From NCBI GenBank assembly GCA_013115145.1, contig JAAPAO010000185.1:1-56566 (forward strand): a stretch of 56,566 nt of DNA. Reading direction: 5' to 3'. The stretch comes from Perkinsus chesapeaki ATCC PRA-425. Taxonomy: Eukaryota > Protista > Perkinsozoa. Positions 6,199 to 48,934 of this stretch are shown here, one piece after another. The notes under the pieces were generated by a model. That model ran no database searches and had not been told where the DNA came from. It worked only from the letters and a program-made list of their open reading frames with translations. Each line of letters opens with the position of its first letter. Position 1 is the first letter of the stretch. Position numbers and translations under genes: made by a program.

Positions 6199-8617
6199 TC
6201 ACTGAATGAATTGCTGAACTGCCTGAAGCATCTCAAGTGGCTTGTTCAGCATCGGAGTATGGCTTCCATCCGTAACCTGATTCATTATTGGAAGAGTAAC
6301 CTACAATCCGGGCTTGGACCGCACGCAGTAGGAATGCAAATAGACAGTTTTGAGAAATTGAAGAGGTTCGACCATTCGCCTACGACCATTGGAGAGCCAC
6401 TACTTCAAGACATACCTCAATGAAAGCCAATGACCCTCCTGTCGAATACGTGGCTTGTTTAATTGTCCCAAGTGTACCACCTTGATTAAACTGAGAAAAC
6501 TTCCAAAATCCAGACCATCATGTTATACTAAAATATATACCTTGAGTGGCTTGACCGGTGCTTTAGCTAATTCTGTACCATAGTCCACCTTTCCCTTTAG
6601 TCTGCTCATCCAATACAAAGCACCACGAGAGTTGCATACGAAGTCCTGGTCTCCATTGAAGACTACAACCTGATGGTAAATACTGGAACAAAGTGCTTGG
6701 AGGGTCTTCATAGTCACAGCTGTGCAGACTATGAAGACTATGCAGACTAAATTCAATCACAAGGTGCATGCTCAGTTGTTGCTCAACAGTAGTGAGCTTT
6801 GGGACATTCAGTCAGGGGCACACGCACTCGTGTGATGGTGCTCTGTCACTACCCAGAGCCAACGCCCCAACTAGTGTATGGCGAGCTATGGCTACCTAGT
6901 GCGCATTGGCTGGCTATCGCGTTTAACTGTTACCTTGAGGCCCTCATCCAATAGATCCGAAATGACATTAGTCGTATCAAAAGCACCGTATTTCATGAAG
7001 TCGTTGAATACCTATTCACACGCAACCTGCACTCGGTGTCGAATAGGATGTGATGTTAAATATTCCAGATGTCGAAGTTCGCACCTGGTTATCACTGCTG
7101 AACCATTGTTTGTCCACTCCTAGTGCAGTCTGAATACTTTCGTCGTTCATGTGAATCTCCGCCTAAAGTGGAGGATAATGAAAAGGAAAACATTGAACAA
7201 TCACATTTCCAGTAATAAGCTTGTAATTCTTTCCCTCTCCTCCCGGAGACACTCGTACATCGTACCTGACGTTGATCACCGTATTTCATGAACGCGGCCC
7301 CATTCGGAACTCACCGGCTAATATGGGCAGCGTCAAGCGGGTTCAACAAGGCATCTCCGCAGAATTTCATCGCTTTCTGGCAAGCGTCTGAAAGAGAACA
7401 GGTCCATAACTTAGCATATTGGTTCGTATCACCGCTGGGGTAGATCTTTACACAGACTTACGTGGATTAGGCTCCGAGCTGGCAGAAGGCTGACAAGCCT
7501 TCACTTTATCAGCACAAGTATATCCGTCGGTGACCATTTTGGCGATTCTACATGGAACAGCCTACGATTTCTTTTGCATTTCGTGTGTAAAACAACCCTT
7601 ACACTTTCTCTGGAAGGAGCTTCCTATCTTTTGCCATCTCGACTCCACCCCTATACCTGAATAGATTGGCAGTTGATGATAAGCTCATGAATATCACTTA
7701 ATATATGTCTGGTACATGTCTAGCCGCCCCATAGCTCCGTCAATGATCAGTAAAGACTTTAGTTTAATCCCAGATTGGGCCTTGAGAGATACAATCTTCT
7801 TAGCAAGAAGAGTTGCAATGGAACCTGAGGATATTAGACTTATATGATACATTTTATCGACGGCAAAGTGTCGACGATACGAAAGTTCACCAATGAGTGT
7901 CGCCCCGACACCATCATCAAGTCTGACCCCGTTTACCATCGAAAGATGCGCCAATCAAGTGCAAGTTGTCTTTGGCTTTTGGATCTTGCTTTATAATATC
8001 GAGCAGAGTATTGTACCTGTACACATAAGAGTGTGTCTGTCGATGATGTTTCATACAAGTTATCGATGTATTGTTTGATAGTGGTTTCTGTCGGCCCGAT
8101 ACTGAATCCAGTCTTCCCAGGCGCGTCAATATAAATACCATTCGCCGTTGAAGTCCAAGAGTACCTGATGGACGGGATCAGACTTAGGCTGTTTAAGAAG
8201 TCGAACACACTTGTTGAGGGAGAGGGTGAAGTCATCAACTTCGATAATGCAGGGGCCATTGACTGTCAGGGTTGCACCAAGTGCACTAACACCGGGCCCC
8301 CCCGGAAGGTAGACAAATGTCGGGGTACTCTGTGTAACCTTGTCGGCATTTATGTAAGCGTGGAAATACCTGATTGCCGATGAAACACTCGATGATCGTG
8401 ACTGATATCACTTGTTGGTGGCTGAGGTAACGGTGTAGCCAAACACTTGTTCACCGCCTGAATCTTCACATAGTGCTCCTCCTCCCCCAACGCCGCCAAT
8501 GACGCCTGACAAGAGTTCAGCAACATCAAATCTCATTAAAGCATGTCAATGGTTGGGTGCACCTGGGATGAAGAAGAATCCTTCCAATGCGAGCAAGATA
8601 TAGTAGCCAGATATCAT
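6199..8617 (-). CDS. Secreted serine carboxypeptidase, peptidase family S10 (~14-15 exons)
   Basis: Spliced model gives a signal peptide (MISGYYILLALEGFFFIPG), YLPGGPG, YSWTSTANGIYIDAPGKTGFS, nucleophile LHLIGASFDG (Ser 7944-7946), acid GDQDFVCN (~6645) and His in VTDGSHTP (~6260). The stop is at 6199-6201. Motif order matches S10. Confidence 0.9.
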
Positions 8618-8995: not shown

Positions 8996-10533
8996 ACCTT
9001 TCAATCGCATACCTGATTGTTTCTCCTTTCCTCGTCGCCATGCCGAGCCCGGTAAATCGAACCTATCCAGGGAACTTCCCCAGCTTATCCGTTTGTCGCT
9101 CACCGTCGTTGATAGAATCGCTGACACTCACCGTGAGTGATTCACGGATGGCATGCGTCGGCTTGCGGGTCTCTAGTGTATACTCGCCATTCTACCACTC
9201 CGCTGTTTCTTGGTGGCATCTGGCCTATTATAATTTGATGATCAGTTTCTCTGGTCTACTTGTAGTGTTGTCCTTTACCAATTGGAGAGTTACCACTCTC
9301 GACATGCTCGTCGCTTATCTACTATCGTATAGGCGAATCGCCTATCGCCTAAGGCGATAGGCCAGAGAAGATGAAGCAATGTGTGAGCTACTAATACAGT
9401 CCCATTTCTGGCAGACATTTCCTGCATAACGATGTCCCTCATTCGTATAGCATGTATGTAGTGGCACTACAGTAGTGCTGTAGTGAGGCCTGAAATAGAT
9501 AGGCTGAGTGGTGGTTAGAGCCCTACCTTCATTTTATTAGTCTTCTCTTCAAAGCTCAACAGCCATGCGTTCAGTTAGAGGCGACGAAGCAACGACACAA
9601 ACATGCGTTAAGTTCTCCTTTTGTTTGGATTCCAAACTTTGGAAACAAGGTGAGTGAATCCGATTCACGGAATCACTCGGAGTGGTATAATGAGTCATTA
9701 ACAAACGATACTATGAGTTTGTCTCACCACCACAACGATTTATTCAGAGGCACAGTGAACCCATGGGTATTATCTTAATTCATTTTGGATTATATGTGAG
9801 GAATAAACTAATCACTGAAGATTGGAATTAACAGAAGGCCAACCAAGAAACAGCTCTTCGGTTTACCTCAGCAAAATGAATAAACATCGTTGGACTCTAA
9901 CCAAGCAGATTAGAGTCTAATCATTAGACCCCCATCCATGTTGATCAGTGGTTAGATATAACTTATCTGGTATCAAGTTAATACCAGATAAGTTATACCT
10001 TACGTTGATACTATCAACATTGATATATTGACAATATCCCATTCCGGGGCTAATCTATCTCCTCTTATGATTAGTTATCAGTCTAACCTCGCAGAAGATT
10101 AATAACACCCACCACGGGTGGGCCACCACGTTTGCTGAACATATCGAGGACGGGCAGATCGAGTGTGGATCACACTGTGTGATGTACACTAACGGAAACG
10201 CAAGAGCCCTTCCGTAAAAAACGTTTCGTCTGTGAGTGCGTAAAGGTACCATCAAAGGCCTTTATTGTAGAGATGGGCGTCTTTGATTATGATAACGATT
10301 ACGGTATGACTTACGATCTCGTAACTTTTTGCGGTGCGGCTTATTACGGCTCATGGCTTACGGTTTCTACTGGCTCGGATGTCTTGTTTGAAGCGTGTCC
10401 AGCATGAACTTGCAAGCACCCACTGAGTCCGCGAGCGGTCTAATCGCGCAAGATTACACCGCAACGGTAGCTATCGTAATTTCGTATGATTCACGGGTTC
10501 GTAACCCCGTTACGGTTACGGTAACTGTATTTG

Positions 10534-10623
10534 CCGTAACCGTAACCGTAACCGTAACCGCAACCGTAACCGTAACCGTATTCGTATTCGTAATCGTAAT
10601 CGTAATCGTAATCGTAATCGTAA
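10534..10623 (+). repeat. Hexamer microsatellite: (CCGTAA)n grading to (TTCGTA)2 and then (TCGTAA)n
   Basis: About 15 hexamer units read directly. Inverted TTACGG units occur at 10510-10521. Confidence 0.95.
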
Positions 10624-23190: not shown

Positions 23191-24137
23191 ACTTCAATTT
23201 CATGACTCCCATAATGTTTTTTTGCAATGTGGGTAGTGGCGTGAAGAACACAATCTTGGCAGGCCGGCAAAGATGATTTTGAGTTAAAGCTGGGGGGTAG
23301 TAAGTTGTTACTATTCGACGTACAATCGAGATTATATGCCGCTGACCCAAGTATTAGATGGCTACTAAGATTATACCGACCTGCGAAACTCATGCTCGCC
23401 CCGGTACGGTCGTGTGATGTACACAATTGTCTGTCTTCTTCATAGCTAACACTATTTGTCCCTGTCTCCATTAACCCTCATTAATTATACTGTTAGTATC
23501 GTTATTGTGTTCTGATTACTACACGCCAGTACCGAGGATTCTGGCAATAGTTCCATGGATGTGTTTTCTTAACTCTTTCTCCACATGTTTGCATTCTCAG
23601 GTTGATTCCATGCTTTTATCAAAACGAATAAAATGCTGTTTGCGATTCGGTGCGCACCTTCAAAGCTGGCAAGGAGTTCACTGTCGGTAAAGTATATCGT
23701 CCTGGTAGAGTAAATGACAGCTGCAGGAAGGCCGTGTCGAGGCTCATAGTAGTGAGATAAAATGAATCACCTGGGGATAGAACCTGCGGCTTCAAGAATA
23801 CAGCTGAGCTGCTCTACCGCGCCGCCAATGCAGATTTTCAAAAATATAATCGGAGGTGGTTGGCACAGATGGTTTTCAGCGGAGAGTCCCTAAGCGCTAT
23901 CCACATGTTTAAAATTTCCTGTGCGGAAGTTACATGTCACCACGGAGAAGGCCAAGGTAGGCTGAGCAGCTCCAAAGATCGCATCGATTTTTAATCTCCG
24001 TTACTCGTTCTCTCGGATAGCTTGATCGATTTTATCACAAGGCTTCCCTCGCCCACCACAACATGTACAACACAAGTCAACAATCCACTCCAAAACTGCT
24101 GAAACGTAACAATCATGTCATTTTGCAAAGTCAGTCT

Positions 24138-25854
24138 TCACGGCTGTTGTTTCCGTTTCCTCGCAACAACGACAACCTTCTCGTCTTCATCCTTCTGGCC
24201 AACCGTATTGCTCGTCACCAAATCGACCGTTCCCCAGCCGGATGGAGTCAACGGTGCCTCTTCACCCTAAAGTGAGCATGAATGCAGATACAAGAGATAG
24301 ATACAAAATGGAATACTATTGAAAGACAGTATATAACGCCAACTATGGCCGCGAAAGAGATTATATGAAAATGAATAGACTTCCGAGAACTTGATTAACA
24401 ACGCTCCTACACTGGAACTCGCCTGCCAGGAAAAAGCGTGATGAACGGTGGGCAGTCCTGTAGATACATTACTGAATCGTTCACAAAACATCACAGCAAC
24501 CCAGGCTCTCGACATAATAGAGTAATCTTTATTGAGCGGAAGAATCTTAAATTTGGAACAAGTAATCTTTAAGATTTGGAATAGTATCGTTAAGAGTAGT
24601 GACACTACTGTAGTGTCACGCTACTGTAAGTATTTACACTATATACAACCGACTTACTATAGTACTGCGACACTTAGCTATACTAAGACGCAACTAGCAT
24701 CGCATCCATCCAAGAAAATTATCCCCACGACTACCTCAATATCATCATCCCAACCAACAGGCAAGTCGTACTCCTGCCGAATTCGTTCCCGAATCAGCCG
24801 CCGCCTAAGCCGAGCCGATTTCCAGCGCGCCACGAAATGCAACGCACCTTCGACTGTAGAAACTCTCTCCGGGCGTCAGACACGATACCGAGTAGATAAA
24901 AGCAAGGACAATGAGCACATTCATGGTGAAGCCAGATGGATCCTGACCAACCAAAATCATCACTCCCAGAAATGCGTCCTTCGGGGATCGAAACACGCTC
25001 CTGGGTGCGACGATACGAAATATTTATATGAAAAATGTGAATAGTAATTTATCAGTTGCTCTGGAGATTATACGCGCCCGGAGCAGAAGGAAACATCCAA
25101 CCCAGTGGTGCGCTACGACTCCCTCACCGACGATCATGCCGGAATTTATCCACCCTATTATCCTCTTCATCATCTATGTCGGTACTGCCCTAACAAAGGC
25201 TCTGAGCCCATTTCACAGTCCATCACATTTGGCAAGGGATAGATATTCCAGAAAATGCCTAAATCGAGCGAGCCTCATGTTATAGGAGAGATGCCGCCAA
25301 ATCCAGCCTTATTGAGAATGTTATATCACTGAGTAGTATTTTAAAGAATTCCTTAAAAAATGAAATTTTCCGGTAGTATCCCGACTCGTCCGCCGATCGA
25401 TAGATATCAAAATTGGCGACTCAGCGGCAACTTATATATCTGAACTCGCCAACGGTTACTCTATAGAAGCTTCTCCGCACTATATGTTTAGCCTTTAAAC
25501 TTCCTCACACAATCTCCCCAGTGAACACATTATTCCTTCTCCACCATTACTACCTTAGAAGGGCTAACAAAGAACTTATTGGCTGCATACGGCCCGAGCT
25601 TCCAATCTTTAGGAGGCATCCGGCCTTGATCCAACTTCTTGTGCGCCTATGAGGAGTTACTCCGAATATTGCGGAAATAATCACACCTGAAATCTGGGGT
25701 CGTTCTCCCAGCTAGCACCGCTCCGTCCGCCGCCAGCAGGTCCCTCTCCGCCTTGGGGCCCAAAGGGCGCTGGATCGTATTTAGCAGCCTCACCGGAGAA
25801 GGCTCTCAATCGAGCTAATGGAAGGAGCCTGGCTCGCGGAGTGGCGAGAAGCAT
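24138..25854 (-). CDS. 7-exon, 235-aa protein with a mitochondrial-presequence-like N-terminus and one hydrophobic segment; function unknown
   Basis: Exons 25687-25854, 25554-25646, 25460-25492, 25128-25189, 24848-25000, 24735-24804 and 24138-24266 are all GT-AG and phase-consistent (708 nt). The N-terminus MLLATPRARLLPLARLRAFS is Arg-rich and lacks acidic residues. Confidence 0.7.
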
Positions 25855-26551: not shown

Positions 26552-29500
26552 ATGTCATTGGATGCCTCAGCGATACCTACCCCTCTGATGCATGGGATTG
26601 CGGGAGCTCTAGCCAACACGCTGTCGATCGTCCTGCTATATCCTTTGGATCAAATACGTAATAGGGCTCATTAGGGGTATACAGGGTCACAAAAAATATG
26701 GAAAATTTCGGGAAAATATGTAAAAAATATTCTTTGCCGGAAATGTTAAGAAATTATTATTAACATTCGGAGCTAGATATGCACATTTTAGAAATGATGT
26801 TATTTGGTCCGGGATGCTAGAAACAGGATTACTCCAATTTTGAAGTAAATGTGATTCGGGAAAGTGCCCAGAATTTGGTAATTCGGCGAGTCTAAAGAGC
26901 TTCCTTCGTCTAGGTACCATTCAACAGGCGGCATCATCTCGAAACTCCGGTGTTTCCCTCTCTCATTTGCTATCCCTGAGGAATATCCCTTCACTCTACC
27001 AGGGGATTGGAGCGTCTGTGGAGGCATTGCTGGTCAGCTATTTTGTGTTCTTCTTTGCATTTGCGTAAGTAAATATCTCAAGCGACGTCTTTACATTGCG
27101 ACATGAATCCTCTACTCTGTCATCGAGTTATTGGATTATTCATAGTTTTGTAAAAAGTTAAATAATAAATATCGATTTCTTACTATTTATTGCAGCAATC
27201 TGATGAGCTTCCCTGACTCGGAGACTTGGAAAAAAGACGTCCTTTCGACTACTAGCGGTTATGTTCAGATACTTTAGACGTAGCAAGTTGCAGTTTTCTG
27301 GAAGGAGCAGACCGACACCATTCGACAATCTTGTATCATCTATGGCGGCCGGAATTCTGAATGTAAAATATCGATATAGCAGCTCGCATTATCTCACCGG
27401 ATACACACGGGTCTAGATTCTTGCTAGTAGATGGGATACGCTAACCACTGGTTATATAATTGTATGGTCAAGTATGAGTGAGCGCGTTGGTCAATCTGAT
27501 GTAGCAGTTCCGCAGGAGGAGAATCTCTATCTGTCTAGTTATGTTATATTGTATCTACTGTCGAGCGGTAATAATATCGCTGAGTGAGAGCCTCAGCGTA
27601 AGTCGAAGGACAGGTGTGAGTTGAGCTTCTGATTCTTACTGGCCTACAACTAGAAATCAATAAACTAACAGGCTGAGCCAAATCTTAGCCGCATCTAATG
27701 TTAAATGGTTATTTAGTAGTTCAGTCTTGGCAATTGTCTATAAGGGTTAGGCAGTGTGTCGACTGGCAATTATTGTACTAATACGCAGCGGTAAGAGTAC
27801 TATATAATGAATGTGTAGTTTGTCAAGAAGCGAATCATTCACAAAGATTTTATAAGGAAACAAAATGATAATCAGTGGGATTTCTATTGAATATCATTAT
27901 CTTGTAGTAGTTGCACTTCTCCAATTTCAGGTGCTCATGACGAGCCCTCTATGGGTGTATTCTACCACCAAACGTCTGGGAAGCACATCTCGCGGGGAGT
28001 CGTTTCTTGGTTTTGTAATGGGTAGGGAGAAGTGGTCTGATTTATGGAAAGGTAGTCGAAGGACGGCGAGAATACCAGTTAGATTGCAGCTGCTTTGCAT
28101 AATGGAGAAGCTTGAAATAGATTATTTTTCCGCAAATATTTTCCCTAAAATTTCCCAGTAGATTAATTTTATCATTATATATCGTATCATATGACTCTAC
28201 AGATTTATTTTCATTGAAAATGTCCACACTGTTCAAATATCAAGCTATTCGGAAATCGACGGGCTACACCTTCACTTTGATTCGGGTATGAAGTTGGTGC
28301 TTATTCTAAATTCCAATGCACCAGTTGGCTCTCGTGTCTATCCTTTCGGTTTCAATTTCATATCGGAGGTTCGAATCCGATCTCTGGTTTCCGAGTTCTC
28401 TCTTCGCCGAAGAGAGCGTTCGGTAAGACTCAGTTTCTCTTCAGGAACTGCGGCCTCATTGTGGCTAGTCGGCAACCCGGTGGTGCACTTCGTCGTATAC
28501 GAAAGTGGAAGATTGGCATTATTGAGCCGAACTCAGCCAGCAAGGCAGAGGGTAGTAGGGAATCGGCTCACCGGATCGCGAATGAATCATGAACCGTTCG
28601 GGGACAGAGATTCATCTGACATCGCGGAAATCGTCCTTCGAGGGTCAAGAATTGTTGGTAGCGTGGACCGGAAGAACTGTTTAACGATTTACTAATAGTG
28701 CTATCATTCATATAACTGTTCAACGATTTATTAATGGTGCTATCTTTCATACAACGATTTTGAAGATTTACGAAATGTAACGATCTAAGTGTCAGATAGA
28801 AATACAGTTAGTAGCTGTGTTTCTATCGCTTTTACCAGTAAGTAGTATTAATTATGCGTATTAGCAACAGTCTAGAGGAATGCTTCTCAATTTGGGCAAC
28901 AGCCTATGTGTTTGTGGATCCTAAAATCCTGGCCATTTCTGGTAGTAATATCTGATGTAGTGGTATTGTCTACACTGGAAATCACTTCTGTCTCCTCGAT
29001 TGTGTTCCACTTTTTGATCGATGCGAAAATCTAAAGCTAACGATAAATTTCACTCCTCTATATAAGTATTTTGATTGGAATGGTCCGCCGTTGTGAAACG
29101 TACACTGCAACGGTTCGTAGTCGGTTATTGTACGATGAAACGTCCTCTACTGTCTTCCTCGAAAACTGGCATTGGTTGTATTATAAAACCGTCACGGTTT
29201 GTCCTTTCGACTTTCAATTCATTATATTCTCATAAGTGAAATTCGCACTTTATCGAAATGTATTGCTAAGGATCTTAGGGTTTCTCGGCGATAGATGACG
29301 GAGTATCTGCAGAAGGCGTGAGAGTGCTGACTGATAGGCAAGCGATGGTGCTGGGAGGGCTCGCCAAGTTCACCGCTACAATGGCAACTTATCCTCTACA
29401 GGTGAGTTCCAGCGACAGCTAAAAAGTTGTAATTTGCTTAATGGTTTGTTGTCTCCTGAATGATGAGTAGTCAGTAAAAGGACTAGTTTTTAATCTCTCG

Positions 29501-34003: not shown

Positions 34004-34035
34004 GCGCAGGTTCAATTCCTGGCTGGGGCATTTTT
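34004..34035 (+). other. tRNA-like 3' fragment (T-arm, acceptor 3' strand, A, T5) just after the carrier stop codon
   Basis: GCAGG-TTCAATT-CCTGG-CTGGGGC-A-TTTTT. No matching 5' half lies upstream. Confidence 0.6.
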
Positions 34036-36063
34036 CTGTAATTATCATCTGTACTGTAACGATATATTCACGTTGTATTACGAAAATCGAGTTTCTATTT
34101 CTTTGTAGAGTTTCGTTGGGCTACTTGATGATTCGGAAGCGATTATACCCCACAGGTGGGTTCATATGGGATTTAACGATGTAAAGTTTTTACCACGGAT
34201 TTGAAATATCTCATTACTTTACGATGAATGAAATGCTAAGTGATTCAGCCCAAGTCTAAAAGGGACTTTAAATTCCCTTTCAGCTCTTTGGTTTTTTTCA
34301 CGAAAATTCCATGTTTGAATCTGAAGTATTTCCATCCCCGAGCGAAACCATTCCTACGGTGATGCTGAATGGCTCCTTGGACTTTGATAAACGACTCAAG
34401 TGAATGTATTAGTTCATTGGTGAATGATAAAATAGTACTATAATAATTATAGGTAATTAGGGATTCTCGTTATGTTATAAATATATTAATAACATTATAA
34501 TTGATATCATTGTACACTGCGCATCAAATTCTGATCAGCTCTTTTAAGAGTTGAGAACAACTAAGGTGTGGTTATTAGCTCATTTGACGCACCCTACATA
34601 TAGTAACTTCGTATATAATAGAGATTCCACCTTCTCCTTCAATATCATTCTCCATCTGCTTAAGGCATATTCCGGTGCTGATGAAATGTTGCAGTGACGC
34701 GCAATATCTTGGCGCGCGGTCGTGAACGATGATTCTGCGAGGCCTCTAGAGCTAGGGGCATTATAATCTGATTTTTGATAGATATCTGATCCACCATCAT
34801 TATAGTATTCAAAGCAAGGTGTGCATTAGTTAAGAGCAGCGTATGGTTCCTGGAATATATAGTCCTTCTGGGACGAACAGCGAGCACACAAGCTGATTAC
34901 ACCACGTTCCATTGGGCGATTGCTCAGTAATGCGGTAAACATCAAATCGATTTTACCCCATTCGCGCATTTGGCATCTGCGACGCTTTTGATTTAATCAA
35001 CCGCTCTACAGGAGCTGCCCCAGAACGGTTATATATTATAGAAGATCCTCCCCCGCCGAGGAATCTACATTGCTGCCGATTTCTGCATCCCCGCCGATTA
35101 CCCGAAAATAATGCGAACTCCTTGGACCGATCATTATTATGAGTAGCAGCACAGATGGTAACATTTGCAATCGGTATTTCACCGGAGTTCGGCAGGCTAC
35201 GACAACTTTCTAAAACCGACACAGCGATGCACTGCTGCTGGCTAGCCTGCTCGAAGGGGACAGACTGCTGCACAAGATAAAGTTGTGTATAACATTTCAT
35301 AAACTTCATTATCAAACTAATGATCGAACGAGTCCGATTTACTATGGACTAATTTATCGTAATAAATGTAACACTAATATATTAGATTGGAAGTTGTCGC
35401 ATAATTTCGCCTGATGTCTGGTATCGGAATATCTGACCGCAGCCTTCCGAGACTTGGCATTTTTGGTGGAGTACTTGAGTGTAGAAATTCATCGAGATAA
35501 TTTAAAGACGTCTACGGCGTGCTTTCTGTGAAGTTACTTACCATTTAGGATTTAACAGTATATTATTCGCTTATGTCCAATAATTATTCCACATCAGCAC
35601 AGCCGTATAGCTCCAAACAAGATCAAGAGCAAGGTGATATTGGGGAAGGCAAGGGGAGGGGGGGGGGCATAGAGGAGCATCATATGAGATGATGGTATGA
35701 TTGATGGACGATACCGTATTAGACATAGCAGCAGGAAGGTGTGCCTGTTAGTCTGTATTTTCTGTTCTCTCTTAAGAACGCTTTTCCTTCTCCTTCAAAT
35801 GCTTCTCCGGAAGGCTGGATGAATCGCTTCGTGTAATCAGTTCGCCTGCTCGGTTGGGCTGTGTAAAATGGGCCACACCATTTCGATTCTATTGAGATCG
35901 AAATAGTTGACACTAAACTGACGAAAAATCAGCATTAACCTCGTTATATTGGAAAAACAATCGAAAAAACTCAGCAGGTCATATAATTTTGTAATGTTCT
36001 GCAATGCCCCACACAACTTGTACTTTTCCTAGATAAGAATACTGTCCTAGACTTCATGCTCAG

Positions 36064-40255: not shown

Positions 40256-40701
40256 AGATTACTATAAAAGTTGAAGTGATATTTGTTGTTGTTGTTGTTC
40301 ATATGGAGATAAGTTTCTATTAGAGAATCGTTCCCTTCACTGTCACCAGTCTGTTGCGTTCACTGTGCGATGTTCGATGGGACTGTGTTTGATATAAGCT
40401 TCCGGCGCCCCGTACCCACAGCATCGCACGGAGATAGCTTTTCGTGGCGCGCGCCTTTTGTCTGGGGCGAGCGAGATTTACGTCAGCCTTGGTGTGGTGG
40501 TGGATGGTGAAATATATTGGGATGTTATTGAGGAATATGGATGGAATTTGATAAGATATTTTGAGGTTAATTTCACAAAGATTCGTTTGAAGTTGAATTG
40601 CAAAGATTCTTGGGGGGTCGAATTGCAAAGATTCCTGCGAGGTTGATTGGGAGACCAAGGTTCTTTGGGGTAGGGTTATTGGTGTGTGATTGGTTCCAAT
40701 T

Positions 40702-43700
40702 ATGAGTGACACTCCAAAACTAAACCGATCGGCGATGACGTCGTTGCAATCGGATATCCATTCGATGCAAAATAATATGAAAACTGACGATTTCCATTCC
40801 TTGGCAAACTCCTACAATGCGACCCTGAGGAGTTGGGAGAAAGCCGCGGCGATGAGCTCGGCGATGAGCGGTGCTGAGGTGGTCGATGTTCAAAAGATGG
40901 TAAGGTGCGCATGCGTGCAAATGTGGTAGTGTGGTTGATGTCAGAACGCCCCGGACTTCCTGGTGAAGGCGGTAGTTGACTTGGAGGATTATATTCAGGA
41001 GAAGTTCTCGAGTAGTTGGGAAATCTTTATAGTGCATAAATGAGCGTATCTTTAGATAAGTCTAAGATGTCGAAGATCAAAGCACAAGCGTTGAACAAGC
41101 TTAGGGCACAGGTAAGATACAAAATAGGTCAGCTTGGTGACGACTGTGGCTAAATCGATCAGGTCCGGAAGGGAAATGCGCAGACTTTCTCTGAGGAGCA
41201 GCTCGAGCATTGTCGAGAGCACCCGGAAGATTACGCTGACCTGGAGCCCGAGGTTGACGAGGACTCTGACGACGACGATCAGGATGAAGTTGAGAGTGAG
41301 GAGTCCAGTAGCGAATCGGAGAGTGATAGTGACGACGAATCTTCCGAGAGCGAGTCGGATTCGGAGTCGGAGTCGGAGAGCAGCTCGAGCGAGAGCGAGG
41401 ATGAAAGCCCGAAGGTTCGCGGTGCCGGGATCGAACCCGGGTGGATCGGTTTGTGTATTAGGCCAAAGCGAAGCCGAAGCGTCGGGCAGTCGTTGATGAT
41501 GTGGATTCTGAGGGATCGCTGACTTCCTCAGATGAGGAGAGCGATAGTGACGAGGACGAGGTAATAAAACTCCAGAGGCCGGGATCGAACTTGCGTGGTT
41601 CAGTCGTCATCGGACGAATCGTCCTACAGCAGTAGCTCTTCATCATCGTCGAGCAGCTCCTCGGAGTCGGACTTCTCGACGAGTGAGAGCGAGTCTGAGA
41701 GTGACGCGGAGAGCGCATGGAGCATGTCGGCCGACGATGAGAGTGAAGATGACGAGCTGGACGAGCAGGCGAAGAGGAGAAAGAGAGCTTTGAAATGGCT
41801 CAAGGACAGCGATGAGAGTGACTCTGAAGATGAGAGGAGGCAGGCTAACGAGGTAATATGGCCTAGCGGTAGAGCGTTCGGTTTGTAACCCGTATGTCGC
41901 TGGTTCGATCCTTAGTTGTTACGTTTAGATCCGTGCTCGCCGCTTGCAAGCTCGTGGGGCCAAGGACGAGGCGGCAGCCAAGCGTCAGCAGGCCATGGAC
42001 AGCGATGCTGATGAGGAGGACACCGACGCCGAATTCAACGTCATAGACCGCGAGGAAGCGCTGGCTGAGACTTTGAAAACTCAATACGGTATCCATGATG
42101 AGATGGAGGAGGAGGATGTGCTGAGCAAGACTAAGGAGATCTTGCAGCAACGGGGTCGAAGAGGAGTTGACAGGCAACTTCAACATAAAAAGATGCTTGC
42201 TCTCCTGGAGATATCCGAGAAGAACGATTTCGATCTGAGCACTCGAGCGACCCTTCTGGGAGCTATCCTATCTCATTACGTGGACCAGCGAGCTGGCGTG
42301 TTCAACAGTCTCCCTAGGAAGGCATGGTTGGAGTGCTTTGGTTATCTTGGCAAGTTGATATCTCTCGTGGCTGCCGATGCTAACACTATCATTCTCACTG
42401 GTGGTATGGAGAAGAGTGAGGATGAGACTGTAAAGAGGCAACAGCGATCTGCGACCAACTCGGCGTTGGCCGGCTACATCGAACAGCTGGACGAAGACCT
42501 ATATAAGAGCCTTCAAAGTGCAGCAGAGTAGGCTTGGCCGGGGATCGAACCAGGGACCTTTCGATTGTTGTTAATTTTAGTTTGTCCTCCGCGCAACATT
42601 CCGCTGGTTCGTCGACTACTACTGGTGCTATCGATAATGCCGAGCAGTACACACAGCGACTGGTGGACTCCTACCGACTAGCTGCCGTGGAGTTCGTGGC
42701 ATTGTGTCAGTTCAAGAGTAATGGAGGGAGGGCATCTGTGAAGGGTTCGTACTGGATCATTTTTAAAACGGAGAAGTGGTACTTGTGAGAAATAAGGTTC
42801 ATAAAAATTTGCCAACGTACCAGGCTGGCGGCCTTGAAGCGTTTTCTTTGAAGACTTCTCTAAGGCTTCGTCACAGCGACATTTTGGCAACTAATCACTC
42901 CGCCTCCAATAGACCTAACTCGAACTAGGTTGTTGACGATGACGTTTCATTTCGGTTCCGTGCTCGTTTGTAGCTTCGCCGCGGATTAGTTCGAGGTTTT
43001 TTGTGATGTCGCGGCCGGGGTCTTTCGCATGTTGGTTGTTTCAGTTGATACCAGCGTTGAGGAAGGTGAAGCCAAGGACTCCGTGGTCTCCCGCGTCGCT
43101 TTGAAGTTGATAGATCATCTCTACTATCGTCCAGAGAACCTCAACAAGTTGGTCATTCGCAAGATTTCCGAGAACCTCAAGAACGGCGACGATCTGATGT
43201 CATGCAACCTCGCGAGCGCCTTGGTGGAGACCGCCAGTGTCGAGTGGGAGCGTCTCTCTCAGCTGGAGGAAGGCAGCTCCGTGGCTCTCGTCGGCAGTCT
43301 GGCCGCCTGCATCTACAACTTCAGCGGTCCTATGGCGACTAGCATGAAGGTCGTCGCTTTGTTACGTCAAATTTTCCACTACGCAAATAACGATCGACTG
43401 AAGGAAGCCAGGAGGCTGATAACGGTCTCGAACGTCCACGAGAGGGTGCCTCCCTCCCTTACCGGCGCGGGTGCCGATGTCAACACGCAAGTGTTATACA
43501 ACAGGGCGCTGGCAGCGATCGGAATGGCTCACTTCAGAGCTGGAAATGTTGCCCAGGCACATAAGTAATATATGGGTAATAATGTAGGGGGTGGGAATCG
43601 AACCTGTGTAGGTATCTATACGAGCTTTGCGGACAGAATCGATGCCGTGAACTTCTTGCTCAGGGATACAGTAGAGTGTCTACCATGCGCGGAGAGGTAG

Positions 43701-45003
43701 CCATTTCGTGGCGCAGTGACGGAATTTCGTGCCATTCAGGAGAAGACACCCGAGCAAGAGAAGGCTGAAAGACGTCGTCGTCTGCCCTATCATATGCATA
43801 TGAATCTCGAGCTCATCGAGACGGCCCATATGATTTGCGGTGTCCTTCTTGAAGTGACTCAGATGGCTTATCACCGTGCAACTGGTAAGGTGGTCTTGGG
43901 TTCTATCCGCGGCTGGGGTATTTTTATTGTATATTTTATACAGTGCTGGAGAATATCGTCTATACGTCGAATCGATGAGGAATTTCCTCAGGGAATGCTT
44001 GCAGGAATTCCTATTATGGTTTTGATAAGCGGTACTTCCCAACTCTATTTTTCAGGTGCCAACAGTCCCTTGGTGAATCGCGTTGTCCGTCGGTCTCTCG
44101 AGCTCATGGATCGTCAGACCTTCCTGGGCCCTCCTGAGTCAGGTCGTGACTCTGTACTTTTCGCTGGCAAGGCGGCCCTCTCCGCCGACGTTGACCGCGC
44201 TGTGGCGTTGGTGTCGTCATTGAAGATTTGGGAGCAGCTACCAGCACATGTTCTTACTTCCATTCAAGACGGCATGAGGAGGACCTGCCTTCAAGTTGCC
44301 CTGTACAGAAGTATGCTAACCCATACCTCAGTGAACTCCCTCCAGCTCTCGGAACATTATAAGGTGGATCACAGCGAAGTTAACGGTAGGAATTAATATG
44401 ACAACTTGCAGTGGTTCTAGCTTTGTGAGATCTAGGGTCCGTTGTGGAACTTTTCGTCGGGTCATTGGATTGCAAATGTATCGGTGAACTCCAATTTGAC
44501 GCTGGTCGGCATTGGTCTTTTTTTGTTAGCTATGATTCGTCAACTGATCTTAAGAGGAGAGTATCCAGCTCAGTTCGTGCCGGAGGGTGAGATCGGCGAT
44601 GCCACCGAAGACAAGATGCTTTTCACCAAGTAAGAGACTTAGCCTTTCTGGAGGATTCCCTAAATCTTGTCTTTCCAGCTTCACCCGGGCAACTCGATTC
44701 CAGCAGTTGTCTCGTCAGCTTGTGGACCGCTCAATCATGACGACGGATAGCAACGACAAGCTGGTGATGGATCCAACGACTGGTCGTTACGACTACCGAG
44801 GAAGCGGCCTTCCGAGTGATCAACCCAAACCGAAGATTGCTCGAGCGCCGATGACAAGCGAGGAGGCGGCCAGGAGAGGATGGGGCGCTGCACGGCGGCA
44901 AGCGAAGGGAACGGTGATCCCGAACGCTTCGGCTGTGGGCGGTCTGAAGCCCGCTGTTGGTGGATTGAGGACAGGCAAGTACGTACCGCCAGGACGACGT
45001 TAA
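40702..45003 (+). CDS. EIF3C: Eukaryotic translation initiation factor 3 subunit C (14 exons); the true start may lie upstream
   Basis: Introns: 40900-40944, 41012-41055, 41112-41162, 41415-41461, 41561-41603, 41853-41928, 42528-42580, 42718-43044, 43565-43611, 43697-43739, 43885-44055, 44386-44529, 44630-44678. Motifs: DLEDYI, KAQALNKLRAQVRK, LIDHLYYR, TQVLYNRALAAIGMAHFRAG, RELLAQG, EKAERRRRLPYHMHMNLELIE and LGPPES. Confidence 0.92.
41853..41928 (+). pseudogene. Degenerate tRNA-like cloverleaf (anticodon position TGT, Thr-like) forming eIF3c intron 6
   Basis: A-box TGGCCTAGCGG, then GGTAGAGCG, loop TTTGTAA, variable region ATGTC and B-box GGTTCGATCC, all at canonical spacing. GTAATA pairs with TGTTAC. 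Several stem mismatches argue against a functional tRNA. Confidence 0.7.
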
Positions 45004-45957: not shown

Positions 45958-47004
45958 CTAGCAAGAGCAAGGTACGTTACTGCCGAAGCAGACAGGTACA
46001 GTCTGCCAGTACTTGCAATAGGAGCCAGGATAAGTTAGCTCACACTTCTTATCAGCCGCACTACAGTCAACGGGAGCGGGAGTAGTGGCTTCGGGGAAGG
46101 CGTTATTCATCACCCAAACGAAGCGAACGATAGCCTTAGCAAGCTGCTCCTTCACAACCTCGATACGCTGTGTGTAGTAGTCCATGGGAAGAACATCGCC
46201 GTCCTCAATCTCGGAACCGTCCACATGCCTATAGGCGTCTGAGCAGGCCGCAGAAGCGGTCTCGACTGCCATCGAGTTGACACACTCGTCGAGACCGTTT
46301 TGCTCGCAGTCAGCAAGCCAATCTGGTATCATTTCGTGGAAGGCACCACCTTCAGCGAGCTCTGCCTGAACATCGGCCTCGAGAAGGGTCCAGAACATAT
46401 CTCTGTCAGCGGGCGGAGTGCTGAAGTTGAAGTTCTGCTGGATGTAGCCTGGACCGTATTGGCTACCTTCGAGCTGGTCGATCATCTTGGAGTCCCATGC
46501 GGAATGCAGGTTGCCATCCTCGAAGTCGGCGAACTTCATGTCAACGTTAAGAAGGTTGCCACCGACATCAGAGCCGCGGCCGAGGTGAAGAGGTTGATGA
46601 ATGTCGCCCATAAAGTGCATAAGGAAGATGAAAGCCACCTGCCTCTGTTCTAGCGGAAGGGTCTCATCTGATACCTGTCTGGTGTAGTTCTTGACGGCAC
46701 CAACGACGCAGTAGTCATCCTTGCAATCTGTAGAATAGTCGAAGTGGCAACTATCGTCGGTATCAGCATAATGCAGGCCAGCAGACCACTCCCACTCGGC
46801 TGCGTCGGGCCCATGAAGGACGCTATCCGGCAGGCTAGAGTAGTCGGCGATCCTGACACCTTCCCCCATGAGCTCTGCCACCGTCTTGTTGGCGTTGTCA
46901 TTGAAGTAGTCCTTGGCAGCGTCGACGATGGCAGCATGTCCATCTCGTCCCCAAGCAAAGGCACCGGGGATAACTATAGCGGCAAGAATGGCTGTGCTGA
47001 ACAT
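45958..47004 (-). CDS. Secreted S1/P1 family nuclease 1 with a C-terminal 6-Cys module (348 aa, intronless)
   Basis: Signal MFSTAILAAIVIPGAFA, then mature WGRDGH, LHYAD, FLMHFMGDIHQPLH, GGN and NLHSAWD (tri-zinc ligands). It ends with a TTPAP linker and CSAADKKCELTYPGSYCKYWQTVPVCFGSNVPCSC. Confidence 0.95.
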   Translation of the reverse strand: MFSTAILAAIVIPGAFAWGRDGHAAIVDAAKDYFNDNANKTVAELMGEGVRIADYSSLPDSVLHGPDAAEWEWSAGLHYADTDDSCHFDYSTDCKDDYCVVGAVKNYTRQVSDETLPLEQRQVAFIFLMHFMGDIHQPLHLGRGSDVGGNLLNVDMKFADFEDGNLHSAWDSKMIDQLEGSQYGPGYIQQNFNFSTPPADRDMFWTLLEADVQAELAEGGAFHEMIPDWLADCEQNGLDECVNSMAVETASAACSDAYRHVDGSEIEDGDVLPMDYYTQRIEVVKEQLAKAIVRFVWVMNNAFPEATTPAPVDCSAADKKCELTYPGSYCKYWQTVPVCFGSNVPCSC

Positions 47005-47884
47005 GGTGTAGAGTTGAACAGTGGAGAGGTGTTCCCGGAGAGGTGAACACAACCGCTAGCGCAGCTGTCTCCTCGGCTAATGAAATCAGCGCATGATCTG
47101 CGTTGCTTGAAATCGGGGCTTGAAAGCTCACTCCGAGAATAGAGAAGTCAAGTTAGCAGTAGTTAACAAACGCCTCTCGTTGGGTATACAAACGGCCTTA
47201 CATGTGCTTCGTCGAGCGATACGTTTGGGGCCTAAGAGATTGCATATCTTCAACATCTATATGGTCACTGTACACACAACTATAGGTCGGTAGAGCCTAT
47301 AGCCGCATGGCCGCTCGTAAGCCGTGAGCTGCATACGCGACTCGCGCTATCCACGTGGCTTCCGAATAAATGTGCTTTCGTGGGCATTGTGCTTCGGAGA
47401 ATTAGATTGCTAGGGACAGTGCCAATTACTTACGGAAAAGATAGTATTTCTAAGATGTATCGATTGAGTTGAGTTGCTTATCCACGTTAGGCTATAGCTC
47501 GGAATTGACAGGCCTACTGTAGACTCTGCCGCCCAGCGGATTTCTATAACCAAAGCCACTGAGCTCCAGATTGATGAAGCACTAGGCAGTAGACTCAGGA
47601 TGGTGAAGGAGTTCCTGTCCCGTATTTGACTCTTGGGGAACATGAACGCCGTTTGAAACCTACAGATGGTTTTGAATGGCTTTGTTCGTAAAATGGGCTG
47701 GAGCAGGCTACTGGCGTGTCTCGTTAGTTCAACTAACTCAGGTGATTCGCTGATTCCGCGGTGACTGAGTATCACTAGTATTCAAAACAACAACTTTGCG
47801 GATAGCTTAGTGAAAAAAGATGGCTTCCGGGAGCTGGTGTTGAAAACAGACGTCAATGTGACAGCTGAAAAAGGGTAGATTATT

Positions 47885-48934
47885 TCAACAAGAGCAAGGT
47901 ACATCCGTGCGAAAACACACAGGGATAGTCTGCCAGTATTTGCAATATGATTCAGAGTAATCTTGTTGACATTTCTTATGGCCTTCAGTACAGTCGACGG
48001 GCGCAAGAGTTGTAGTGGCCTCAGGAAAGGCATTATTCATCACCCAAGCGAAGCGAACGGCACCTTTAGCAAGCTGCTCCTTCACCACCTCGATTCGCTG
48101 AGTGTAGTAACTCATAGGAAGGACATCCTTATTTACCACTTCCTTACCGTCGACATGCTTGTACGCATTATTGCATGCAAGAACAGCCGATTCGGAAGCC
48201 ATACTATTCACACATTTATCAAGACCATTCTTCTCGCAGTCTTCAAGCCACTCTGGGACCTTGTCGTAGAAGGCTCCACCCTCTGCGAGCTCCTTCTCGA
48301 TATGCTTCACCGTGATGCTCCAGAACATATCTCGCTCGGCTACAGGTGTGTCGTAGTTGAAGTCCTGCTGGATGTACTCATCACCATAATCAGATCCCTC
48401 AAACTCATCGATGAGCTTCTCGTCCCAAACCTTGTGCAGATTTGCATTTTTATGATCAGCAAATTCGTAGTCGACGTAAATCCTATTCCCGCCGAGGTCA
48501 GAGTGACGGCCAGCATGGAGAGGCTGATGAACATCACCCATAAAATGGGTAAGGAACTTCAGGGCAACTTGACGTTGCTCAAGTGGTAAGCTCTCATCGG
48601 CGACTTGGCGAGTGTAGTTCTTAATAGCACCAACAACACAGTAGTCGTCCTTACAGTCGCGTGCATAGACGAACTGACAGTTGTCAGTATCAGCGTAATG
48701 AAGTCCTGAAGTCCACCTCCATTTGTCCTTCTCGGGGCCGTAACGAATGCTGTCTGCCCATGTCGAGTAGTCGGCAAGCCTAGTGCCCGCGCCCATAATA
48801 TCGGCCACAGCCTTGTTAGCATTGCCATTGAAGTACTTCGCGGCGGTGTCGGCCACGGTAGCATGACCGTCTGGGCCCCAAGCAAAAGCGGTTGGAAAAG
48901 TGAGAGCAATGAGACTTGTTCGGTTGATCATCAT
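47885..48934 (-). CDS. Secreted S1/P1 family nuclease 2 with a C-terminal 6-Cys module (349 aa, intronless)
   Basis: WGPDGH, WADSIR, LHYAD, FLTHFMGDVHQPLH and NLHKVWD. Full-length tandem paralog of nuclease 1. Confidence 0.95.
   Translation of the reverse strand: MMINRTSLIALTFPTAFAWGPDGHATVADTAAKYFNGNANKAVADIMGAGTRLADYSTWADSIRYGPEKDKWRWTSGLHYADTDNCQFVYARDCKDDYCVVGAIKNYTRQVADESLPLEQRQVALKFLTHFMGDVHQPLHAGRHSDLGGNRIYVDYEFADHKNANLHKVWDEKLIDEFEGSDYGDEYIQQDFNYDTPVAERDMFWSITVKHIEKELAEGGAFYDKVPEWLEDCEKNGLDKCVNSMASESAVLACNNAYKHVDGKEVVNKDVLPMSYYTQRIEVVKEQLAKGAVRFAWVMNNAFPEATTTLAPVDCTEGHKKCQQDYSESYCKYWQTIPVCFRTDVPCSC

What the first reader, a model, noticed from the sequence alone, without database searches (positions are those of the whole stretch)
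41415..43611. tRNA-derived spliceosomal introns: five eIF3c introns carry a tRNA T-arm/B-box
Seen: GTTCGATY occurs in introns 4, 5, 7 and 9 in antisense (41429, 41583, 42543, 43596) and in intron 6 in sense (41903). Read as tRNA strands they are CCCGGGTTCGATCCCGGCACCGCGA, CAAGTTCGATCCCGGCCTCTGGAGTTTT, CGAAAGGTCCCTGGTTCGATCCCCGGCCAAGCC (anticodon-stem 3' side, AGGTC variable loop, T-arm, acceptor strand) and CAGGTTCGATTCCCACCCCC. In introns 4 and 7 the tRNA 3' end abuts the GT donor. With uniform base composition this 8-mer is expected once per ~16 kb (both strands), i.e. ~0.07 in the 1140 nt of eIF3c introns, against 5 observed. By eye I found only about three context-free hits elsewhere (9055, 21347, 35322). 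The copies differ from one another, so this is not one recent element. Established: B-boxes bind TFIIIC, extra-TFIIIC sites organise chromatin, and introner elements create introns, but I know of no described tRNA-fragment intron class. Inference: (a) intron gain by insertion of tRNA fragments, (b) selected intronic TFIIIC sites, or (c) sources of tRNA halves or antisense small RNAs that link a translation factor to tRNA status.
Basis: partly seen in the sequence, partly recalled or inferred. Interest (0 to 1): 0.85.

Follow-up and report, generated by a model that had tools for sequence, protein, structure and literature searches.

The report
tRNA-gene relics filling eIF3c introns
In this Perkinsus parasite, most of the tiny introns of the translation-factor gene eIF3c are worn-down tail ends of old tRNA genes whose polymerase-III promoter motif (the B box) has stayed intact across three species, which points to an undescribed source of introns and to a function that is still in use.

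Summary
All five GTTCGATY sites lie in GT-AG introns of a 14-exon eIF3c gene (CDS 40702-45003): 5 sites in 1,091 intron bases against 0.06-0.08 expected.

They are relics of tRNA genes. One is a whole tRNA-like unit. The others are 5'-truncated tails. Where the trailer survives, a run of T (a polymerase-III terminator) starts exactly after tRNA position 73, and there is no CCA.

Two further relic introns were missed (i8, i11). i10 holds an ambiguous A-box-like element.

In the P. olseni and P. marinus orthologues, the relics of i6-i9 and i11 sit in the same introns and orientation. Four-fold sites are saturated (22% identical in all three species), yet B-box positions 52-56, 58 and 61 never change. 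Changes fall on the consensus-degenerate positions 57, 59 and 60, and once at 62. Stems and folds are not kept, and both orientations occur.

Vitrella and Hammondia share none of these intron positions.

Best reading: tRNA-gene fragments gave rise to Perkinsus-specific introns, and their B boxes persist as DNA sites, probably for TFIIIC.

No RNA-seq run was available. TFIIIC binding is untested. i4 and i5 are species-specific.

Earlier notes of this scan report the same phenomenon on other DNA of this genome. I found no paper describing it.

The parts
40702..45003 (+). eIF3c gene: 14 exons, 13 GT-AG introns (45, 44, 51, 47, 43, 76, 53, 327, 47, 43, 171, 144, 49 nt), 1,053 aa
   Evidence: Stop-free spliced translation ending ...GKYVPPGRR, like P. 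marinus. 90% identical to P. marinus eIF3c over exon 9. Pfam PF05470 on the orthologues.
41415..41461 (-). Intron 4 (47 nt): antisense tRNA-gene tail. B box GGTTCGATCCC at 41427-41437. The acceptor strand and discriminator abut the GT donor.
   Evidence: Exact B box, intron-shuffle P 0.0015. Absent from the P. olseni and P. marinus introns at the same position. Other contigs of the DNA run carry pieces at least 88% alike over 41421-41448.
41561..41603 (-). Intron 5 (43 nt): antisense tail. B box AGTTCGATCCC at 41581-41591, acceptor CTCTGGA, discriminator G, then TTTT (terminator, read as AAAA 41566-41569 on the + strand).
   Evidence: T run exactly 12 nt after the B-box core. Absent from the two sister species.
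41853..41928 (+). Intron 6 (76 nt): whole tRNA-like unit in sense. A box TGGCCTAGCGG at 41859-41869, B box GGTTCGATCCT at 41902-41912. The donor GT lies in the acceptor stem.
   Evidence: Rfam tRNA 21.4 bits (gathering score 29), model positions 2-69 of 71. ARAGORN finds nothing. A and B boxes are kept in P. olseni and P. marinus while the anticodon arm is scrambled; a T run follows in both.
42528..42580 (-). Intron 7 (53 nt): antisense tail from the anticodon-stem 3' strand through AGGTC, the T arm and the acceptor. B box GGTTCGATCCC at 42541-42551.
   Evidence: B box exact in all three species; 18 of 20 core bases identical.
42718..43044 (-). Intron 8 (327 nt): remnant GCGGCCGGGGTCTTTCG at 43011-43027. 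The B box was lost by a deletion of about 8-10 nt.
   Evidence: P. olseni (58-nt intron) and P. marinus have GGGATTCGAACC(C/T)GG(G/C)ACCT at the aligned place, with an exact B box. Donor placed at 42718 by homology and reading frame.
43565..43611 (-). Intron 9 (47 nt): antisense tail. B box GGTTCGATTCC at 43594-43604, 6 nt from the 3' splice site.
   Evidence: Exact B box in all three species plus a second P. marinus strain. The terminator TTTTT is still present in P. marinus.
43697..43739 (+). Intron 10 (43 nt): 21-nt block ATTTCGTGGCGCAGTGACGGA (43703-43723), A-box-like. Its membership in the relic set is ambiguous.
   Evidence: Identical in three species. Its first 11 nt recur exactly at 40440(+) and 24827(-). 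It is multi-copy in the DNA run.
43885..44055 (+). Intron 11 (171 nt): sense tail directly after the donor. Variable loop, B-box-like GGTTCTATCCG at 43899-43909, acceptor, A, then TTTTT at 43921-43925.
   Evidence: Two mismatches here, but an exact B box in P. olseni (GGTTCAATTCC) and P. marinus (GGTTCGAATCC) at the same place.

Best explanation
What is shown. Seven of the 13 eIF3c introns (i4-i9 and i11) are built on relics of tRNA genes. i10 holds an ambiguous A-box-like block. One relic is a complete unit (i6). The others are 5'-truncated tails that keep the T loop, the acceptor 3' strand, the discriminator base and, where there is room, the polymerase-III terminator. There is no CCA, so they were copied from tRNA genes or primary transcripts, not from mature tRNA. 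Five relics (i6, i7, i8, i9, i11) predate the split of three Perkinsus species. Within them the B box is held by purifying selection at exactly the consensus-invariant positions, while stems, anticodon arms and neutral sites have decayed.

What is inferred. (1) The conserved unit works as double-stranded DNA, most probably as a docking site for TFIIIC, like the extra-TFIIIC sites of yeasts and mammals. The reasons are that it is kept in both orientations relative to the gene, it has no fold, and the B box is what TFIIIC reads. (2) The insertions themselves created these introns in the Perkinsus lineage. The introns are little more than relic plus splice sites, the T run or acceptor strand supplies splice-site context, and none of the positions is shared with other alveolates. 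(3) Turnover continues: i4 and i5 are species-specific, i8 lost its box here, and one T arm is chimeric.
For: Motif and enrichment.
Relic anatomy. A T run starts exactly 12 nt after the B-box core (that is, after position 73) in i5, i6 (P. olseni, P. marinus), i9 (P. marinus, P. olseni), i11 and the extragenic relics at 34009 and 23774.
Full tRNA-like i6.
Real introns: stop-free model. The annotated CDS of P. marinus and P. olseni skip the same segments. Intron lengths differ between species by non-multiples of 3.
Selection: four-fold sites are 22% identical in all three species (281 sites), against 28 of 28 identical at B-box positions 52-56, 58 and 61, and 3 of 12 at positions 57, 59 and 60. 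The only two differences in i9 between two P. marinus strains fall on degenerate positions. An alignment-free scan finds exact B boxes in the same introns and strands.
No RNA structure.
Lineage-specific positions and negative control: Vitrella (24 introns) and Hammondia (9) share 5 positions with each other and none with Perkinsus, and have no exact B box in 6 kb of introns.
A large tRNA gene family exists in Perkinsus: PMC3706591.
Against: No RNA-seq run could be found, so splicing rests on comparative evidence. TFIIIC binding is untested, and I did not check that Perkinsus has a B-box-binding subunit. Non-relic introns of the gene are lineage-specific too, so novel positions do not single out the relics as intron founders. 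i4 and i5 share positions with relic-free introns in the sister species. That allows relics to have entered or replaced existing introns, and shows that not every B box is kept. The B box was lost from i8 here without obvious harm. Flank conservation is confounded by splice sites and exons. The chimeric i7 T arm shows that conversion between copies has occurred at least once. Only one gene was studied here.
Confidence: 0.55

Rival explanations
1. Colonisation rather than creation. The introns already existed in the Perkinsus lineage. Whole tRNA genes or fragments landed in them, because introns were the only tolerated sites in a gene. The copies then died, and strong pressure towards 43-50-nt introns deleted everything except the splice signals and the selected B box.
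For: i4 and i5 positions are shared by three species, but only this species has the relic. i8 and i11 are long introns in which the relic is only a small part. Intron content is demonstrably turned over by insertions in P. marinus, as MITE-like repeats in i4, i11 and i13. Relics also lie outside genes at 34009, 23774 and 28368.
Against: Trimming by deletion should be symmetrical, yet the unselected 3' acceptor strand and terminator are kept while the 5' halves are missing. In i4, i7 and i8 (P. olseni) the tRNA 3' end sits directly at the donor, and i6 coincides with the tRNA unit end to end. No intact tRNA gene is nested in any of the 79 kb examined.
Confidence: 0.25
2. No function. The B box looks conserved because the relics are repeatedly patched by gene conversion from the hundreds of tRNA genes or from each other. 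All donors share the T-loop sequence, so only that part stays constant.
For: The i7 T arm is chimeric in P. olseni and P. marinus. Its 5' strand matches the window's copy, while its 3' strand CCCACACCCTAC is 11 of 12 like the i9 relic. The two P. marinus strains differ in i9 by two changes 2 nt apart. Perkinsus has more than 500 copies of five tRNA types (PMC3706591). Pieces at least 88% alike lie on other contigs.
Against: The flanks of i8, i9 and i11 differ between species by scattered point changes, not by block replacement. An 11-nt shared core is very short for recurrent conversion. Conversion would restore T stems, and these are broken. i4, i5 (in the sister species) and i8 (here) lost the box, so patching is not automatic.
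Confidence: 0.08
3. RNA-level role. The motif acts in the pre-mRNA as a branch-point or enhancer element for ultra-short introns, or the relics are transcribed into tRNA-like or antisense small RNAs.
For: In i9 the box lies 6-16 nt from the 3' splice site in all species. i6 keeps an A box, a B box and, in two species, a terminator, which together make a complete type-2 polymerase-III unit. Antisense relics give G-rich runs in the pre-mRNA.
Against: Both orientations are conserved, and the two strands read differently (GGUUCGAUCCC against GGGAUCGAACC). Distance to the 3' splice site ranges from 11 to more than 150 nt; i11 has the box at its 5' end. UCGAAC lacks the U two bases before the branch A. 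No fold beats shuffles (z from -1.25 to +1.19) and there is no cloverleaf consensus. Tails without an A box are poor polymerase-III units.
Confidence: 0.08
4. Chance motif clustering, misassembly or mis-called exons.
For: The window-wide count of the 8-mer is not significant (8 against 4.2). There is no RNA-seq.
Against: Enrichment within introns has P about 1e-8. The same boxes occur in the same introns in two other species' assemblies and in a Logan contig. The whole stretch lies in one 14-kb contig of the DNA run with no differences. There is frame and protein continuity with outgroups.
Confidence: 0.02

Closest known systems
Introner elements (transposon-derived introns of Micromonas, Aureococcus, fungi, Amoebophrya and other dinoflagellates; PMC7789003 and my own knowledge of the field)
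   Same: Inserted repetitive DNA makes up essentially the whole of a short intron at lineage-specific positions. Many such introns occur in one genome.
   Different: There are no shared termini, inverted repeats or target duplications. The source is tRNA genes of several types. Look-alikes elsewhere share only about 30 nt and their flanks disagree. The relics are ancient, and an internal motif is under selection.
Extra-TFIIIC (ETC) / chromosome-organising clamp sites: isolated B boxes bound by TFIIIC without polymerase III (yeasts, human; own knowledge)
   Same: A stand-alone B box is conserved between species, with no functional tRNA gene around it.
   Different: Here the boxes lie inside spliceosomal introns of a protein-coding gene, several per gene, and are visibly derived from tRNA-gene tails. 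Occupancy by TFIIIC is not shown.
tRNA-derived SINEs and their intronic copies (e.g. B2, ID, MIR; Alu B boxes binding TFIIIC)
   Same: Polymerase-III promoter sequence of tRNA origin is scattered through introns. The 5'-truncated copies are reminiscent of retroposition.
   Different: There is no SINE body, LINE-derived tail or A-rich tail. The copies end at the native tRNA 3' end plus the T-run terminator. Many tRNA types are involved rather than one master element.
tRNA pseudogenes and tRNA genes nested in introns (common in animals); the expanded tRNA gene families of P. marinus (PMC3706591)
   Same: These are decayed tRNA genes. Perkinsus has unusually many tRNA gene copies, and Dada transposons live in them.
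   Different: The relic is co-extensive with a minimal intron, and only its B box is maintained. No link between these introns and Dada elements was seen.
Introns created from captured filler DNA at double-strand breaks (Daphnia; the mitochondrial-DNA-derived intron of Bigelowiella; own knowledge)
   Same: An unrelated genomic fragment becomes an intron.
   Different: Here one class of donor sequence recurs many times and then comes under selection.

Membership tests
Functional tRNA gene | Cloverleaf scoring above the Rfam tRNA gathering score, or detected by ARAGORN | tested here: not met
   Only i6 of the window is reported, at 21.4 bits against a gathering score of 29. ARAGORN finds 0 genes in the window and in L001-L003. 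The orthologous i6 and the fragments i4, i5 and i7 are not reported at E up to 10.
tRNA-gene relic (pseudogene fragment) | B box GGTTCRANNCC in tRNA register, with the acceptor strand and a polymerase-III T-run terminator at the tRNA-gene distance, and no CCA | tested here: met
   Exact or 1-mismatch boxes in i4-i7 and i9. The T run begins exactly 12 nt after the core in i5, i6, i9, i11 and the relics at 34009 and 23774. i6 also has the A box at the right spacing.
Spliceosomal intron | GT-AG borders whose removal restores one reading frame colinear with orthologues | tested here: met
   13 GT-AG introns give a 1,053-aa stop-free protein. The P. marinus and P. olseni annotated CDS map exactly and skip the same segments. 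The protein is colinear with Vitrella and Hammondia across the junctions.
Spliceosomal intron | Spliced junctions seen in RNA reads | not testable with these tools
   No RNA run was listed for this DNA. The only run is DNA contigs.
Introner element family | Many near-identical copies sharing both termini (with inverted repeats or target duplications), each forming an intron | tested here: not met
   Other contigs match only about 30-nt cores of i3, i4, i7, i9 and i10. Loose-end consensus agreement is 0.5-0.6, so the flanks are unrelated. The relics in this gene differ in tRNA type. This is limited to one DNA run kept as contigs.
Extra-TFIIIC-like site | Isolated B box conserved between species without a working polymerase-III gene | tested here: met
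   28 of 28 invariant-position columns are identical in three species, against 22% at four-fold sites. No tRNA is detectable.
Extra-TFIIIC-like site | Occupancy by TFIIIC without polymerase III | not testable with these tools
   Needs ChIP, CUT&Tag or DAP-seq in Perkinsus. No paper in the held library links Perkinsus and TFIIIC.
tRNA-derived SINE | tRNA-related head followed by a family-specific body and a LINE-like or A-rich tail | tested here: not met
   The relics lack the 5' head. They end at position 73 plus a T run, or at the splice donor.

The most novel reading that the evidence does not exclude
Perkinsus has a self-reinforcing intron-making system. 5'-truncated copies of polymerase-III tRNA transcripts, or tRNA-gene fragments, are inserted preferentially near sites already bound by TFIIIC. 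They are spliced out as new introns, and their B boxes are then recruited as TFIIIC sites that shape expression or chromosome folding of the host gene. This would explain why relics pile up in particular genes (7-8 of 13 introns here) and why only the box survives.
Probability: 0.12. Interest if true: 0.9.

Novelty: new variant of a known kind. Interest (0 to 1): 0.75.

Why it matters
Where new spliceosomal introns come from is a long-standing question, and the known sources are mostly transposon families. Here the raw material is tRNA genes, in a lineage that has replaced every ancestral eIF3c intron position.

The relics are also not inert. A polymerase-III promoter element has been kept for the whole divergence of three species inside a polymerase-II gene. 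That makes a concrete, testable case for TFIIIC sites, or some other B-box reader, acting within genes of an alveolate parasite.

There is a practical side as well. These relics will confuse tRNA and repeat annotation in Perkinsus genomes, and they offer conserved markers inside otherwise unalignable introns.

Tried and rejected
- Scan of genome contigs for orthologues: that collection is prokaryotic and found nothing.
- P0001 had no contig on record; the longer isoform P0227 worked.
- RNA evidence: none listed under kind rna, one attempt met a busy server, and kind any gave only one DNA run.
- Rfam tRNA model on short stretches around i4/i5 and i7: no tRNA hit. The model does not report internal 3' fragments, so this is not evidence against tRNA origin.
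- Structural T-arm scan (7-nt TTCRANN loop plus at least 4 of 5 stem pairs): 31 sites against 21 +/- 4 in shuffles, and only i7 and 34006 look like tRNA. The stems are mostly decayed, so the arm is not what is conserved.
- Folding of the relics and a consensus fold of i6: no better than shuffles and no cloverleaf.
- Branch-point reading of the antisense box: rejected because of variable distance, the position of the i11 box and a poor match to yUnAy.
- i10 and i11 as two halves of one split tRNA: rejected, because the acceptor strands are not complementary.
- tblastn exon mapping read through the tiny introns, so I replaced it with an exact spliced mapper.
- Literature searches for Perkinsus with tRNA introns, TFIIIC, introner, tRNA-derived introns, or intron gain from tRNA genes: no description found.
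Full report
**Observation.** The window-wide count is unremarkable (4.2 expected). Five of the eight sites fall within 1,091 nt of introns of one gene, where 0.06-0.08 are expected (Poisson P about 6e-9 to 3e-8).

I rebuilt the gene by hand. The CDS runs from 40702 to 45003 on the + strand, with 14 exons and 13 GT-AG introns of 45, 44, 51, 47, 43, 76, 53, 327, 47, 43, 171, 144 and 49 nt. It gives a 1,053-aa stop-free eIF3c.

**Organism and orthologues.** The best protein match to exon 9 is P. marinus ATCC 50983 eIF3c (90% identity). P. olseni is next. I fetched four loci:
- P. olseni locus L001
- P. marinus locus L002
- a Logan contig of a second P. marinus strain, L003
- as outgroups, Vitrella L004 and Hammondia L005

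The window is a third Perkinsus species. Earlier notes of this scan call it P. chesapeaki. I did not verify the name.

**Are these introns real?** No RNA run could be listed, so splicing is not shown by reads. Four lines of comparative evidence support it.
- Removing the segments gives one open frame.
- The deposited proteins of P. marinus and P. olseni map exactly onto their loci only if the same segments are skipped.
- Intron lengths differ between species by non-multiples of three (47/45/168, 43/46/157, 53/51/52, 47/47/50).
- The protein is colinear with Vitrella and Hammondia across the junctions.

The whole 5-kb stretch lies in one 14-kb contig of a DNA run with no differences. That run may be the source of the assembly.

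**What the pieces are.**
- Intron 6 is a full tRNA-like unit. Rfam's tRNA model aligns positions 2-69 of 71 to 41853-41922 at 21.4 bits. This is below the gathering score of 29, with E 6.4 over all 4,227 families for the window, or about 1.5e-3 for the tRNA family alone.
- The others are 5'-truncated tails: T loop, T-stem 3' strand, 7-nt acceptor strand and discriminator.
- Wherever the trailer has not been replaced by a splice site, a run of T starts exactly 12 nt after the 11-nt B-box core, that is, right after position 73. This holds for i5, i6 (P. olseni, P. marinus), i9 (P. marinus, P. olseni), i11 (window, with P. olseni one base later) and the extragenic relics at 34009(+) and 23774(-).
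- This is the polymerase-III terminator of a tRNA gene, and there is no CCA. The copies therefore come from genes or primary transcripts, not from mature tRNA.
- None is a working tRNA: ARAGORN finds nothing, and Rfam does not report the orthologous i6 copies or the fragments.

**More relics than reported.** The alignment with the sister species shows three more candidates.
- i11 begins with a sense tail. The window has GGTTCTATCCG plus TTTTT. The box is exact in P. olseni and P. marinus.
- i8 has an exact antisense box in both sister species. In the window an 8-10-nt deletion removed it, leaving GCGGCCGGGGTCTTTCG at 43011-43027.
- i10 carries a 21-nt A-box-like block identical in all three species.

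That makes seven relic-bearing introns of 13, or eight if i10 counts.

**Conservation.** At 281 four-fold degenerate sites of exons 4-12, pairwise identity is 0.33-0.44, and only 22% of sites are identical in all three species. Neutral sequence is therefore essentially scrambled.

Against that background, an alignment-free scan finds an exact GGTTCRANNCC on the same strand in the same introns: i7 and i9 in all three species, and i8 and i11 in P. olseni and P. marinus. i6 has one or two mismatches. Each exact hit has an intron-shuffle P of at most 0.002.

Anchored on the box, positions 52-56, 58 and 61 are identical in 28 of 28 three-species columns. Positions 57, 59 and 60 are identical in 3 of 12. 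The invariant positions are the invariant letters of the consensus. Changes fall on the consensus-degenerate letters, plus one change at position 62 (i11 in the window).

The two P. marinus strains are 1.4% apart. In i9 they differ at only two sites, both degenerate positions, and both alleles remain perfect boxes.

The eIF3c introns of Vitrella (24 introns, 2.2 kb) and Hammondia (9 introns, 3.8 kb) contain no exact box.

**What is not conserved.**
- T stems are broken. i7 has 2-3 of 5 pairs in P. olseni and P. marinus, and in i5 and i9 the 5' strand is gone.
- A window-wide structural T-arm scan is barely above shuffles.
- No relic folds better than shuffled sequence, and the consensus fold of i6 is not a cloverleaf.
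- The relics lie in both orientations relative to the gene: i4, i5, i7, i8 and i9 antisense; i6 and i11 sense.
- The two strands of these boxes read quite differently.

Together this argues for recognition as double-stranded DNA. TFIIIC is the known reader of B boxes, and this step is inference.

A branch-point role fails for three reasons: the distance to the 3' splice site is variable, the i11 box sits at the 5' end of a 171-498-nt intron, and the match to the branch consensus is poor.

**Origin.** Vitrella and Hammondia share five intron positions with each other, with identical phase. None of the 13 Perkinsus positions coincides with any of theirs. All Perkinsus eIF3c introns are therefore lineage-specific.

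Three further facts favour insertions that created the introns:
- the near co-extension of relic and intron;
- the tRNA 3' end sitting at the donor in i4, i7 and P. olseni i8;
- retention of the unselected 3' tail while the 5' halves are missing.

This is not proof. Non-relic introns are lineage-specific too. i4 and i5 occupy positions that in the sister species hold unrelated sequence, so loss cannot be told from gain.

Kojima and Jurka (PMC3706591) report more than 500 copies of five tRNA types in P. marinus, so donor sequence is plentiful. In the DNA run, pieces of about 30 nt from i3, i4, i7, i9 and i10 have look-alikes at 88% identity or more on about 39 other contigs, with unrelated flanks. 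These are dispersed short copies, not a classical introner family.

**Complications.**
- The i7 T arm of P. olseni and P. marinus is chimeric. Its 3' strand and acceptor are 11 of 12 like the i9 relic. This looks like an old conversion with the box as the crossover point, and it is the main support for the conversion rival.
- However, the flanks of i8, i9 and i11 differ by scattered point changes, which fits selection better.
- The i10 block may not be a tRNA relic at all. Its first 11 nt recur exactly 262 nt upstream of the start codon and at 24827.

**Literature and earlier notes.** Seven full-text searches found no description of tRNA-derived introns or of TFIIIC in Perkinsus. The Amoebophrya introner paper (PMC7789003) concerns a different kind of element.

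Earlier notes of this scan report the same phenomenon on other pieces of this genome. I used them as leads and re-tested the central claims at this locus.

**Verdict.** This is a real, robust and apparently undescribed feature. It is best classed as a new variant combining two known kinds: insertion-derived introns and stand-alone B-box sites. What the relics are, and that they are under selection, is well supported.

Noticed in passing
window 43703-43723 (intron 10), 40440-40450, 24827-24837: A 21-nt block, ATTTCGTGGCGCAGTGACGGA, is identical in three Perkinsus species. Its first 11 nt recur exactly 262 nt upstream of the eIF3c start codon and at 24827(-), where 0.03 exact matches are expected. 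At least 6 other contigs of the DNA run carry a look-alike. It may be a transcription-factor or promoter motif rather than a tRNA A box.
   Followed up: partly
window 34009-34040 (+), 23750-23784 (-), 28368-28395 (+), 5969-5979 (+): tRNA-gene tail relics lie outside any clear coding context. Those at 34009 and 23774 keep the T-run terminator at the exact distance. The relic at 34009 has the same acceptor strand as the i11 relic, and the one at 28368 the same as the i5 relic.
   Followed up: partly
L002 3319-3486 (i4), 5924-6421 (i11), 6892-7183 (i13); compare L003 2287-2340: P. marinus ATCC 50983 introns carry a MITE-like repeat (GGTGAAACTCC... / TTTTCATATYACTAGGGTGAAAC). In i11 about 445 nt are inserted directly after the B box. 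The insertion is absent from the second strain, whose i11 is about 53 nt. This is an insertion polymorphism next to a relic.
   Followed up: no
L001 5065-5115 and L002 4659-4710 (i7) compared with L001 5832-5878 and L002 5598-5647 (i9): The i7 T arm is chimeric in P. olseni and P. marinus. Its 3' strand and acceptor match the i9 relic at 11 of 12 bases, while the window keeps a self-complementary arm. This suggests a past conversion between relics about 1 kb apart.
   Followed up: partly
window 45961-47052 (-) and 47888-48934 (-): Two intronless S1/P1 nuclease genes (Pfam PF02265, E 2e-47 and 2e-60) lie downstream of eIF3c. S1/P1 nuclease genes also follow eIF3c in P. marinus and P. olseni.
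   Followed up: partly
window 41109-41147 (last 3 nt of exon 3, the donor and the first 36 nt of intron 3) and 40900-40944 (intron 1): The start of intron 3, including its donor, has look-alikes of 33-36 nt on other contigs of the DNA run, and it contains an A-box-like TAGGTCAGCTTGG. Depth is also raised over intron 1. Either may be a further decayed relic or a repeated intron end.
   Followed up: no
window 10500-10580: A tandem array of GTTACG/GTAACC-type short repeats lies next to a GGTTCGTAACC site.
   Followed up: no
L001 5732-5771: The deposited P. olseni protein P0151 skips a 40-nt 'intron' inside what is exon 9 in the other species, removing conserved residues. This is probably an annotation artefact.
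   Followed up: no
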